Source of the DNA: Chrysemys picta bellii
Lineage: Eukaryota
DNA: 64,000 bases
NCBI RefSeq assembly: GCF_011386835.1
Contig: NC_088802.1
Location: 9,672,001-9,736,000 of the forward strand
Direction of reading: 5' to 3'
Shown: positions 11,634 through 12,053 of the stretch, piece after piece
Numbering within the stretch: the first letter of the stretch is position 1
How the letters are laid out: each line of letters starts with the position of its first letter
Made by a program: the position numbers and the translations under genes
Notes under the pieces: model-generated
What the model was told of the DNA's origin: nothing
Database searches by the model: none
Seen by the model: only the letters and a program-made list of their open reading frames with translations

Positions 11634-12053
11634 ATGGTTAGGGCAAAGCAGTTAGTGTCTAAGCTATCCCTGCGGAGAGCCCAGTGGAGTAAGCAACTAG
11701 GAAAAAAGGGTCGAACAAGTGCCTATTCCTATACACCAGAGAAGGTGAAGAAACTCCCCCATGATCGTCTTCAGACCGAAGTGCTCTGGCAGAGCCGAGG
11801 GTCTCGGAAATCTACCGAGTTGTTGCTTCCTAAACAGTCTTTTCAGCGCCTGAGCAAGATGGTCATTCAGAGCTCTGGGGGCAGCCGCCTGCGTGTCCAA
11901 CTTCCCACCTATCTAGCCTTGCAGGAAGCCACGGAAGCTTATCTGGTGCAGTTGTGCGAGGACTGGAAGTTATGCGCTCTGCATGCGAAAAGAGTCACTG
12001 TCGCATCCAGCGATGTTCACCTCGTGCGATGCCTGCGCGGGGCAAGAGCCTGA
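11634..12053 (+). CDS. Highly divergent histone H3-like variant (139 aa), intronless
   Basis: MVRAKQ...KSTELLLPKQSFQRL...LALQEATEAYLVQLCEDWKLCALHAKRVTV...RGARA. By hand alignment, 44 of 80 residues are identical to H3 K56-A135. The ORF is uninterrupted and has CCAAT and TATA upstream. Confidence 0.88.
   Translation: MVRAKQLVSKLSLRRAQWSKQLGKKGRTSAYSYTPEKVKKLPHDRLQTEVLWQSRGSRKSTELLLPKQSFQRLSKMVIQSSGGSRLRVQLPTYLALQEATEAYLVQLCEDWKLCALHAKRVTVASSDVHLVRCLRGARA

What the first reader, a model, noticed from the sequence alone, without database searches (positions are those of the whole stretch)
11634..12053. Extremely divergent H3 variant with an intact ORF, rewired modification sites and CENP-A-like destabilising features
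Hand alignment to H3: K4 and K9 are kept, S10 becomes L, K14 becomes R, K27 appears as T (RTSA), a VKK (K36/37) is kept, and K79 is lost within a loop 1 that is one residue longer (QSSGGSRLR). The chaperone-specificity motif 87-90 is PTYL (neither SAVM nor AAIG). DNA-contact arginines of alphaN and R63 are lost (R49W, R53G, R63P), with F84V and T107W. The H3-H3 four-helix-bundle and L2 residues (L109, C110, H113, R116, T118, D123, L126, R131) are conserved. Conservation concentrated on the tetramer interface, with no stop despite about 45% divergence in the fold while neighbouring relics are riddled with stops, argues for selection. Inference: it forms unstable, open nucleosomes insensitive to PRC2 and DOT1L.
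Basis: partly seen in the sequence, partly recalled or inferred. Interest (0 to 1): 0.88.

Follow-up and report, generated by a model that had tools for sequence, protein, structure and literature searches.

The report
Reptile-specific, testis-linked histone H3 variant gene
This is a real, transcribed and selectively maintained gene for a very divergent histone H3, shared by turtles, lizards and tuatara but unnamed and apparently undescribed. Its H3-H3/H4 contact end is strictly conserved, its DNA-contacting front evolves almost freely, and it is found in what look like testis transcriptomes.

Summary
Window 11634-12053 (+) is an intact 139-codon, single-copy, intronless H3-type ORF, about 44% identical to the genome's own H3.2.

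It is a gene, not a relic:
- Intact syntenic orthologs (between TRIM genes; an H1-like gene upstream in the hard-shelled turtles) occur in six other turtle lineages.
- More distant members with the same derived C-terminal signature occur in two lizards and the tuatara.
- Under neutrality, keeping the frame open in the turtles has P about 1e-5.
- omega is 0.23 for codons 85-139 (p 1e-6) but about 1 for codons 45-84 (alphaN-alpha1-L1).
- The CCAAT/TATA promoter block is conserved as far as softshell turtles.
- There is no histone 3' stem-loop.
- RNA-like runs from three studies give contigs (depth 59-93). In two runs these start about 40-60 nt after the TATA box and the upstream spacer is empty.
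- Nine of the 14 small runs that hold it also hold a sperm fibrous-sheath AKAP exon.
- A model supports pairing with H4 (0.73, best control 0.00).

The tail sites are not conserved between orthologs. I found no description of this family in the literature searched.

The parts
11436..11545 (+). Conserved promoter block: distal CCAAT-like box (11443-11452), GATA-like TCCTATCAG, CCAAT box (11499-11503) and TATA box (11521-11527).
   Evidence: Nearly invariant in five turtle sequences and still recognisable in Pelodiscus, while the adjacent 5'UTR differs by 26-42% between species.
11566..11633 (+). 5' untranslated region. It is CT-rich, varies in length between species, and contains no upstream ATG.
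   Evidence: RNA-like contigs begin at 11566 (X2) and 11583 (X3), about 40-60 nt after the TATA box. In X2 and X3 there is no coverage of 10540-11477. Sequence read.
11634..12053 (+). Coding sequence of the H3 variant: 139 codons plus a stop, intronless.
   Evidence: Orthologs. Selection tests. No splice joints in the laid contigs.
11886..12050 (+). Codons 85-139: the end of L1, alpha2, L2 and alpha3. This is the constrained part and carries the family signature EDW-LCALHAKR-SDVHL-RCLR.
   Evidence: omega 0.23, p 1e-6. The signature is invariant from lizard to turtles. Residues 64-128 touch H4 in the model.
11766..11885 (+). Codons 45-84: the degenerate alphaN, alpha1 and the start of the longer L1. 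This part evolves at about the neutral rate.
   Evidence: omega 1.06, not significantly different from 1. R49W, R53G, R63P and the L1 insertion are here. The AF2 model shows only a 4-residue alphaN helix, at low confidence.
12054..13150 (+). 3' untranslated region with no histone stem-loop. Contigs reach 12172 (X3), 12409 (X2) and 12749 (X1), and X1 pieces continue to 13200. AATAAA at 13126-13131 is the likely poly(A) signal; the true end is not determined.
   Evidence: No RF00032 match at gathering score or at E <= 10, and none in four orthologous loci. Contig extents. Poly(A) signal hexamers.
9383..9916 (-). Divergently oriented H1-like gene (178 aa counted from the Met at 9916). It is the syntenic neighbour of the H3 variant in the hard-shelled turtles examined.
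   Evidence: A 178-aa Linker_histone gene lies about 1.75 kb upstream in Caretta, Natator and Platysternon. It is 89% identical to the Caretta protein. The same runs cover it at depth 3-12.

Best explanation
Window 11634-12053 encodes a functional, replication-independent histone H3 variant that belongs to an unnamed family. The family is at least as old as the split between turtles and lepidosaurs.

Shown:
- The gene is single-copy and intronless, and is driven by a conserved CCAAT/TATA promoter.
- It has no 3' stem-loop and is transcribed.
- Its reading frame has been kept open by selection.
- Selection acts almost only on the C-terminal alpha2-L2-alpha3 part. This part carries a family-specific, fixed set of changes: T107W, K122S, Q125H, R129C and I130L.
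- The N-tail, alphaN, alpha1 and L1 drift or diversify.

Supported by a model: the protein pairs with H4 as a normal histone-fold dimer.

Inferred:
- It is made in the male germ line, together with the neighbouring H1-like gene.
- It replaces H3 in (H3v-H4)2 tetramers whose remodelled four-helix bundle may favour variant-variant pairing.
- It wraps DNA less tightly. The dyad contact K122 is lost in the whole family. The alphaN and L1 contacts R49, R53, R63 and K79 are lost in turtles.
- It would therefore act as a labile nucleosome during spermatogenic chromatin remodelling, as mammalian H3.4/H3.5, TH2B and H1t do.
For: H3 identity.

Orthologs and synteny:
- Terrapene 90%, Chrysemys 97% (partial), Platysternon 86% and Caretta 81%; Natator and a further sea-turtle contig; Pelodiscus, 134 aa.
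- Elgaria, Phrynocephalus and Sphenodon carry the same derived signature.
- Each of the five loci fetched (Caretta, Natator, Platysternon, Pelodiscus, Elgaria) has a TRIM gene within 10 kb, on both sides in all but Pelodiscus.
- In a tree of 35 H3 proteins the 10 members form one group, with support 100/97.

Selection:
- P(all 5 ORFs free of stops | neutral) = 0.011-0.030.
- The spacer shows 21 indel events per kb, so 6.9 frameshifting indels are expected in the CDS. None is seen, only one in-frame 3-bp indel; P = 0.001.
- omega is 0.53 overall (p 3e-4) and 0.23 for codons 85-139 (p 1e-6).
- Window versus Pelodiscus, C-terminal part: dN 0.10, dS 0.75.

Promoter: conserved.

No stem-loop.

Transcription:
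- Contigs of 834 nt (depth 86), 598 nt (depth 59) and 946 nt (depth 93) come from runs of only 70-145 million letters.
- These runs belong to three studies and two organisms, and in two of them the upstream spacer is empty.

Testis link: 9 of the 14 small runs that hold the variant also hold an AKAP_110 exon (a sperm fibrous-sheath family). Four runs of the same species label hold neither.

H4 pairing:
- ipSAE 0.73 against a best control of 0.00.
- That mark was reached by 51 of 78 solved complexes and 2 of 108 mismatched pairs.
- The runs agree in at least 81% of contacts, and the partner's pLDDT is at least 73.
Against: - Codons 45-84, which include alpha1 and L1 of the fold, have omega about 1. 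This is unusual for a histone that must still bind DNA and H4.
- The AF2 monomer model is poor (pLDDT 52.6).
- The H4 model may score well because H3-H4 complexes are well known to it.
- Run tissues are coded. The testis assignment rests on co-occurrence with one marker whose testis specificity is known from mammals, and no housekeeping control was possible.
- No protein-level or chromatin evidence exists.
- Only two of many sequenced squamates have an annotated member.
Confidence: 0.62

Rival explanations
1. A histone-fold protein that binds H4 but no longer builds nucleosomes. It might act as an H4 sink, a chaperone-like placeholder or a dominant-negative during histone removal. Only the dimer and tetramer contact surface would then need to be conserved.
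For: Constraint is confined to alpha2-L2-alpha3, and alphaN-alpha1-L1 has omega about 1. Several DNA-contact residues are lost: R49, R53, R63, K79 and K122. The net charge is lower than that of H3.2, +14 to +18 against +20.
Against: R69, R83, K115, R116 and T118 are kept. The lepidosaur members keep an H3-like alpha1 and L1. The modelled interface with H4 spans the whole fold.
Confidence: 0.15
2. A germline paralog of centromeric H3, that is, a second cenH3-like protein.
For: The tail, alpha1 and L1 evolve fast, L1 is longer in turtles and alphaN is weak. From my own knowledge, not from a tool: these traits resemble cenH3, and germline cenH3 paralogs exist in Drosophila.
Against: The lepidosaur members have no L1 insertion. 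The gene is intronless and lies among histone genes, and the lepidosaur 87-90 motif reads SAVL/PAVL, close to SAVM of H3.1/2. Bird CENP-A is a 4-exon, 131-aa gene with dN/dS 0.03 (PMC5941149). The family does not group with the cenH3 sequences in the tree, though those were fungal only. The genome's own CENP-A was not located.
Confidence: 0.07
3. A decaying duplicate whose frame is open by chance in slowly evolving turtle genomes.
For: CDS divergence (0.112, window versus Caretta) is as high as that of the intergenic spacer (0.098). With five close taxa, omega over the whole gene is not significantly below 1 (p 0.085).
Against: The combined probability of no stop and no frameshift is about 1e-5. 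The frame is intact and the C-terminal signature fixed in softshell turtle, lizards and tuatara. The promoter is conserved. Transcript contigs are abundant. omega is 0.23 at p 1e-6 in the C-terminal part.
Confidence: 0.03
4. A somatic or immune-related histone, suggested by its position in a TRIM/B30.2-rich region that is probably MHC-linked.
For: TRIM genes lie beside it in every locus fetched. The bird MHC-B TRIM subregion carries a histone H2B-like gene (PMC5941149).
Against: Its transcripts co-occur with a sperm-tail marker. No signal peptide or other immune feature is present. From my own knowledge, not from a tool: linkage of histone clusters to TRIM and BTN genes is an old vertebrate arrangement.
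Confidence: 0.03

Closest known systems
Mammalian testis H3 variants H3.4 (H3t) and H3.5
   Same: An H3 paralog that appears to be made in testis. It carries changes at histone-DNA and histone-histone contacts of the kind that make nucleosomes less stable in the mammalian variants (my own knowledge of those variants). It lies next to H1-like and H2B-like variant genes, as mammalian H1t and TH2B lie in a histone cluster.
   Different: It is not orthologous: the family was found only in turtles, squamates and tuatara. It is far more divergent, 44% identical to H3.2 against a handful of substitutions in H3.4/H3.5. It has no stem-loop. Two thirds of the protein evolves almost neutrally.
CENP-A / cenH3
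   Same: Degenerate alphaN with loss of R49 and R53, a longer L1 (in turtles), and a fast-evolving tail and L1.
   Different: The gene is intronless and sits among histone genes. The L1 insertion is absent in lepidosaur members. The constrained part is alpha2(C-terminal half)-alpha3 rather than an L1-alpha2 targeting domain. Bird CENP-A is a separate, highly conserved 4-exon gene.
Short H2A variants of mammals (H2A.B, H2A.L, H2A.P, H2A.Q)
   Same: Lineage-restricted and rapidly evolving, apparently testis-expressed, with a reduced DNA-contact surface (my own knowledge for the H2A variants).
   Different: A different histone class. In this variant part of the protein is under strong purifying selection over about 280 million years.
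Primate H3.Y / H3.X
   Same: Lineage-specific, polyadenylated H3 variants with altered tail sites.
   Different: H3.Y stays close to H3.3. The reptile family seems to derive from an H3.1/2-type gene (SAVL/PAVL at 87-90 in lepidosaurs, intronless, CCAAT/TATA promoter) and is much older and more divergent.

Membership tests
Histone H3 superfamily (H3-type histone fold) | Histone fold alpha1-L1-alpha2-L2-alpha3 recognised by the family profile | tested here: met
   PF00125 at E 1.3e-20 (74 bits, cut-off 26.4). All top solved-structure hits are H3. Modelled helices at 67-80, 90-118 and 125-134.
Histone H3 superfamily (H3-type histone fold) | Forms a handshake dimer with H4 | tested here: inconclusive
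   The model supports binding: 0.73 against a best control of 0.00. The mark was reached by 51 of 78 solved complexes and 2 of 108 mismatched pairs. Runs agree in at least 81% of contacts; partner pLDDT at least 73. The score may reflect the model's memory of H3-H4. No experiment.
Histone H3 superfamily (H3-type histone fold) | H3 N-terminal start (ARTKQ) and an alphaN helix | tested here: inconclusive
   The start reads V/A-R-A-K-Q in turtles. alphaN is 36% identical to H3, and only 4 residues are helical in a low-confidence model.
Replication-dependent H3.1/H3.2 | 3' stem-loop (Rfam RF00032) instead of a poly(A) tail | tested here: not met
   No match downstream, even at E <= 10, and none in four orthologous loci. 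The H2B-like gene and two H1-like genes in the same window do have one.
Replication-dependent H3.1/H3.2 | SAVM at positions 87-90 and a near-invariant sequence | tested here: not met
   PTYL in the window. SAVL/PAVL in lepidosaur members suggests descent from this type. 44% identity.
H3.3 | AAIG at 87-90, S31, and a gene with introns | tested here: not met
   PTYL. No splice joints in the contigs across the unit. The Platysternon GenBank name 'histone H3.3' is an automatic label.
CENP-A / cenH3 | L1-alpha2 targeting domain (CATD) and centromere localisation | not testable with these tools
   Only indirect evidence: the L1 insertion is confined to turtles, and bird CENP-A is a distinct 4-exon gene.
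Mammalian H3.4/H3.5 (orthology) | Orthologous locus and shared diagnostic substitutions | tested here: not met
   Two profile searches of 5.8 billion proteins and a full HMMER scan of 1.84 billion representatives find members only in turtles, two lizards and tuatara.

The most novel reading that the evidence does not exclude
An ancient germline H3 variant of non-avian reptiles, about 280 million years old. Its re-engineered and then frozen four-helix-bundle surface (T107W, K122S, Q125H, R129C, I130L) would make it pair with itself rather than with canonical H3. This would give homotypic, loosely wrapped nucleosomes that mark or prepare sperm chromatin for histone removal. Its DNA-facing alphaN-alpha1-L1 surface would evolve under recurrent diversifying pressure, such as conflict with selfish DNA. 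It would be part of a co-expressed H1/H2B/H3 variant cluster in the MHC-linked TRIM region.
Probability: 0.25. Interest if true: 0.8.

Novelty: new variant of a known kind. Interest (0 to 1): 0.66.

Why it matters
Lineage-specific H3 variants are far rarer than H2A or H2B variants, and the known vertebrate ones differ from H3 by only a few residues. This H3 has kept one surface fixed since before turtles and lepidosaurs split, while the rest changed by more than half. That gives a natural separation-of-function experiment on which parts of H3 are needed for what.

It would also give reptiles their own counterpart of the mammalian testis histone set, which arose independently. It would make sperm chromatin remodelling in reptiles testable with a defined protein. 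Database entries currently call the protein 'uncharacterized' or, wrongly, 'H3.3'.

Tried and rejected
1. Histone stem-loop. None was found after the gene in the window or in four orthologous loci.
2. 'Relics riddled with stops'. tblastn found no H3, H4 or H2A remnants in the window. Degraded H3 pieces exist elsewhere in the genome, for example L013.
3. Lead that the bird MHC 'CenpA' gene is the archosaur ortholog. Rejected: it has 4 exons, 131 aa and dN/dS 0.03, so it is genuine CENP-A.
4. Literature. Five successful full-text searches found no description of a reptile H3 variant. One search was a look-up of the bird H2B-like gene.
5. AF2 monomer model. Confidence was too low (pLDDT 52.6) to argue about alphaN or L1, so no fold search was run.
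6. More members in birds, crocodilians, mammals or amphibians. None appeared in three protein searches. Unannotated genes cannot be excluded, because those genomes could not be searched at the DNA level here.
7. Tissue names of the runs. They are coded, so I used co-occurrence with a sperm-tail marker instead.
8. The five-taxon whole-gene omega test alone was not significant (p 0.085). It became significant once Pelodiscus was added.
9. The split at codon 84/85 was chosen after seeing the alignment, so its p-values are somewhat optimistic.

Full report
WHAT IS THERE

Window 11634-12053 (+) is an uninterrupted ORF of 139 codons plus a stop. It matches Pfam Histone (PF00125) at E 1.3e-20. All its best solved-structure hits are H3 chains, at E about 4e-22.

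Aligned to the genome's own canonical H3.2 (L003:1501-1908, found), it is 44% identical overall and 51% identical within the fold.
- K4 and K9 are kept; S10L, K14R and K27T are present; VKK is kept.
- R49W, R53G and R63P are present.
- L1 is one residue longer and K79 is lost.
- F84V is present, and positions 87-90 read PTYL.
- T107W is present.
- L109, C110, H113, R116, T118, D123, L126 and R131 are retained.

The gene is single-copy in a 2.37-Gb genome. Canonical H3 genes lie in clusters on two other contigs.

A CCAAT box (11499-11503) and a TATA box (11521-11527) lie upstream. No histone 3' stem-loop follows the gene, even at a permissive threshold. The H2B-like gene and two H1-like genes of the same window do have one.

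One detail was not reproduced: the 'neighbouring relics riddled with stops'. The window holds five H1-like genes, one H2B-like gene and this H3-like gene, and no H3, H4 or H2A remnants.

WHOSE GENE IT IS

Protein searches found orthologs in these turtles:
- Terrapene triunguis (90%), Chrysemys picta (97%, partial model), Platysternon (86%) and Caretta (81%).
- Natator and one further sea-turtle contig.
- The softshell turtle Pelodiscus sinensis (134 aa, annotated 'uncharacterized').

The window therefore comes from an emydid-like turtle.

In Caretta, Natator and Platysternon the gene lies between two TRIM genes, with a 178-aa H1-like gene about 1.75 kb upstream on the other strand. The window has the same arrangement. 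In Pelodiscus a TRIM gene lies downstream, and no other gene was called in the 10 kb upstream.

More distant members occur in the lizards Elgaria multicarinata and Phrynocephalus forsythii and in the tuatara. The Elgaria gene also lies between TRIM genes, near an H2A-like gene.

All members share a derived C-terminal signature, EDW-(L/M)CA(L/M)HA-R-SD(V/I)HL-RCLR. Relative to H3 this means T107W, K122S, Q125H, R129C and I130L.

In a tree with 25 other H3 and cenH3 sequences, the ten members form one group with support 100/97, and the turtles form a group with support 100/99. The branches are long, but the shared neighbourhood argues for common origin.

Two profile searches and one exhaustive HMMER scan found no member in birds, crocodilians, mammals or amphibians. 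Unannotated genes cannot be excluded.

The lepidosaur members read SAVL or PAVL at positions 87-90. Together with the lack of introns, the CCAAT/TATA promoter and the histone-gene neighbours, this points to descent from an H3.1/2-type gene rather than from H3.3 (inference).

IS IT UNDER SELECTION?

Turtle DNA evolves slowly. The spacer upstream differs by 0.098 between the window and Caretta, and the CDS differs by 0.112. Nucleotide conservation therefore says nothing by itself. Four other lines of evidence do.

- Stop codons. Simulated neutral evolution along the fitted tree leaves all five ORFs free of stops in only 1.1-3.0% of runs.
- Indels. The spacer shows 21 indel events per kb on the four-taxon tree, which predicts 8.9 events in the CDS, 6.9 of them frameshifting. 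Only one is seen, a 3-bp in-frame indel at the extreme C-terminus (P = 0.001). Stop codons and indels together give about 1e-5. The softshell, lizard and tuatara ORFs are intact as well.
- Codon likelihood in six turtles:
  - whole gene: omega 0.53, p 3e-4
  - codons 85-139: omega 0.23, p 1e-6
  - tail, codons 1-44: omega 0.57, p 0.07
  - codons 45-84 (alphaN, alpha1, L1): omega 1.06
  - Window versus Pelodiscus, C-terminal part: dN 0.10 against dS 0.75.
  - The split at codon 84/85 was chosen after seeing the alignment, so these p-values are somewhat optimistic. The lizard-to-turtle invariance of this segment is independent support.
- Promoter. The roughly 110-bp promoter block is nearly invariant in hard-shelled turtles and is kept in Pelodiscus. 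The neighbouring 5'UTR differs by 26-42%.

Helix alpha3 is only 36% identical to canonical H3 but almost invariant within the family. The conserved end is a remodelled interface that was then fixed, not simply the canonical interface retained.

IS IT EXPRESSED?

Fourteen small runs (60-273 million letters, about 0.03-0.1x of the genome) hold part of the stretch. I laid four of them on window 9200-13200.
- Three runs, from three studies and two organisms, gave contigs over the gene:
  - X2: 834 nt, 11566-12409, depth 86
  - X3: 598 nt, 11583-12172, depth 59
  - X1: 946 nt, 11802-12749, depth 93, plus pieces from 11612 and on to 13200
- X2 and X3 had nothing at all on the spacer 10540-11477.
- X2 and X3 covered the H1-like neighbour at depth 3-10.
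- No splice joints were seen.

Such depth cannot come from genomic DNA in runs this small. The contigs start about 40-60 nt after the TATA box. The unit is therefore transcribed from the predicted promoter.

The X1 contigs carry S81A and S84N, the Chrysemys alleles. This shows expression in a second species.

The 3' end is not fixed. AATAAA at 13126 is the best candidate.

Run tissues are coded, so I tested co-occurrence with a marker. I took a large exon of a sperm fibrous-sheath AKAP from this genome (Pfam AKAP_110, L023:1501-2955). It is held by X2, X3, X4, X6, X7, X9, X10, X12 and X13. These are nine of the fourteen small holders of the H3 variant. Four runs with the same species label hold neither.

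This fits testis RNA. It is not proof, for two reasons. The marker's testis specificity is known from mammals, and no housekeeping control could be run.

DOES IT BEHAVE LIKE H3?

A complex model of residues 42-139 with the genome's own H4 (L009:396-704, residues 20-103) supports binding:
- ipSAE is 0.73, against a best control of 0.00.
- That mark was reached by 51 of 78 solved complexes and 2 of 108 mismatched pairs.
- The runs agree in at least 81% of contacts, and the partner's pLDDT is at least 73.
- Contacts run along alpha1, alpha2 and alpha3.

Because H3-H4 is a well-known complex, this result shows likeness rather than proven binding.

The AF2 monomer model is poor (pLDDT 52.6). It places helices at 67-80, 90-118 and 125-134, as in H3, and gives only a four-residue alphaN.

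MECHANISM

Shown:
- A conserved, expressed, intronless H3-variant gene with no histone 3' stem-loop.
- A fixed contact end and a free-running N-terminal two thirds.

Inferred:
- The protein forms (H3v-H4)2 tetramers through a family-specific four-helix bundle, which may favour self-pairing.
- Loss of K122 (whole family) and of R49, R53, R63 and K79 (turtles) weakens DNA contacts at the dyad and at the entry and exit points. The resulting nucleosomes would be labile and would suit spermatogenic chromatin remodelling.
- This is an analogy with mammalian H3.4/H3.5 and with CENP-A, drawn from my own knowledge of those proteins. It has not been tested.

The tail sites are not conserved: K9 is N in sea turtles, K27 is T or A or deleted, and K4 is absent in the lizard. 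A designed rewiring of the tail is therefore unlikely.

RIVALS
- A non-nucleosomal H4-binding histone-fold protein (0.15).
- A germline cenH3-like paralog (0.07).
- A neutral relic (0.03, effectively refuted).
- A somatic or immune role suggested by the TRIM/MHC-like neighbourhood (0.03).

The idea that the bird MHC 'CenpA' gene is the archosaur ortholog was checked and rejected. That gene has four exons, 131 aa and dN/dS 0.03 (PMC8813856 and PMC5941149). The same paper lists a histone H2B-like gene (44G24.1) in the bird MHC-B TRIM subregion. This parallels the H2B-like gene in this window and suggests the window is the turtle counterpart of that region (inference).

NOVELTY

Five successful full-text searches found no description of this family. 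Database names for the protein are 'uncharacterized protein', 'Core Histone domain-containing protein' or, wrongly, 'histone H3.3'.

It is a new variant of a known kind, a histone H3 variant. It is of real interest to chromatin evolution, but its biochemical behaviour is still open.

Noticed in passing
window 9383-10099 (-) and 57496-58212 (+): Two H1-like genes in inverted orientation are 98% identical over 239 codons. Only the first has the H3 variant beside it. The first is covered by the same RNA-like runs at depth 3-12 and has no stem-loop at gathering score.
   Followed up: partly
window 52584-52949 (+), stem-loop at 53002-53047: An H2B-like gene is 84% identical to the genome's canonical H2B over residues 7-126, has its own N-tail and keeps a histone 3' stem-loop. 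The bird MHC-B TRIM subregion also carries a 'histone H2B-like' gene (44G24.1; PMC5941149). The window may therefore be the turtle counterpart of that region.
   Followed up: partly
window 54764-55345 (-), 58675-59130 (-), 61969-62505 (+): Three further, mutually divergent H1-like genes lie here. Two are followed by histone stem-loops (58672-58716 on the minus strand, 62539-62584 on the plus strand). The window is thus a cluster of linker-histone variants.
   Followed up: no
L021:3271-3744 (-) (Elgaria): A 157-aa H2A-like gene with a long extra C-terminal tail lies 6 kb from the lizard ortholog of the H3 variant. No H2A-like gene was found in the turtle window.
   Followed up: no
L021:9960-10000 (Elgaria): A splice-acceptor-like sequence (pyrimidine run followed by CAG) lies about 30 nt upstream of the lizard gene's ATG, and no CCAAT or TATA box is nearby. 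The lizard gene may have a 5'UTR intron and a different promoter.
   Followed up: no
window 11566-11633: The CT-rich 5'UTR differs by 26-42% between turtle species and carries indels. This is far more than the spacer (6-11%), and it sits between a nearly invariant promoter and the CDS.
   Followed up: partly
P0003 (Chrysemys picta, UniProt model): The database model is 124 aa long and has an unrelated N-terminus (KSPRRRCR...). The X1 contigs carry Chrysemys-type alleles (S81A, S84N), but they were laid only from 11612 on, so the start of the ORF in that species was not checked here. The model's N-terminus may be mis-annotated.
   Followed up: partly
window 46407-47258 (+): An ORF of 283 aa has a GIY-YIG-type endonuclease motif, typical of a Penelope-like retroelement.
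   Followed up: no
L013 (G000 contig C6, 82168118-82168360): A degraded fragment of a canonical-type H3 with many substitutions (94-aa open stretch).
   Followed up: no
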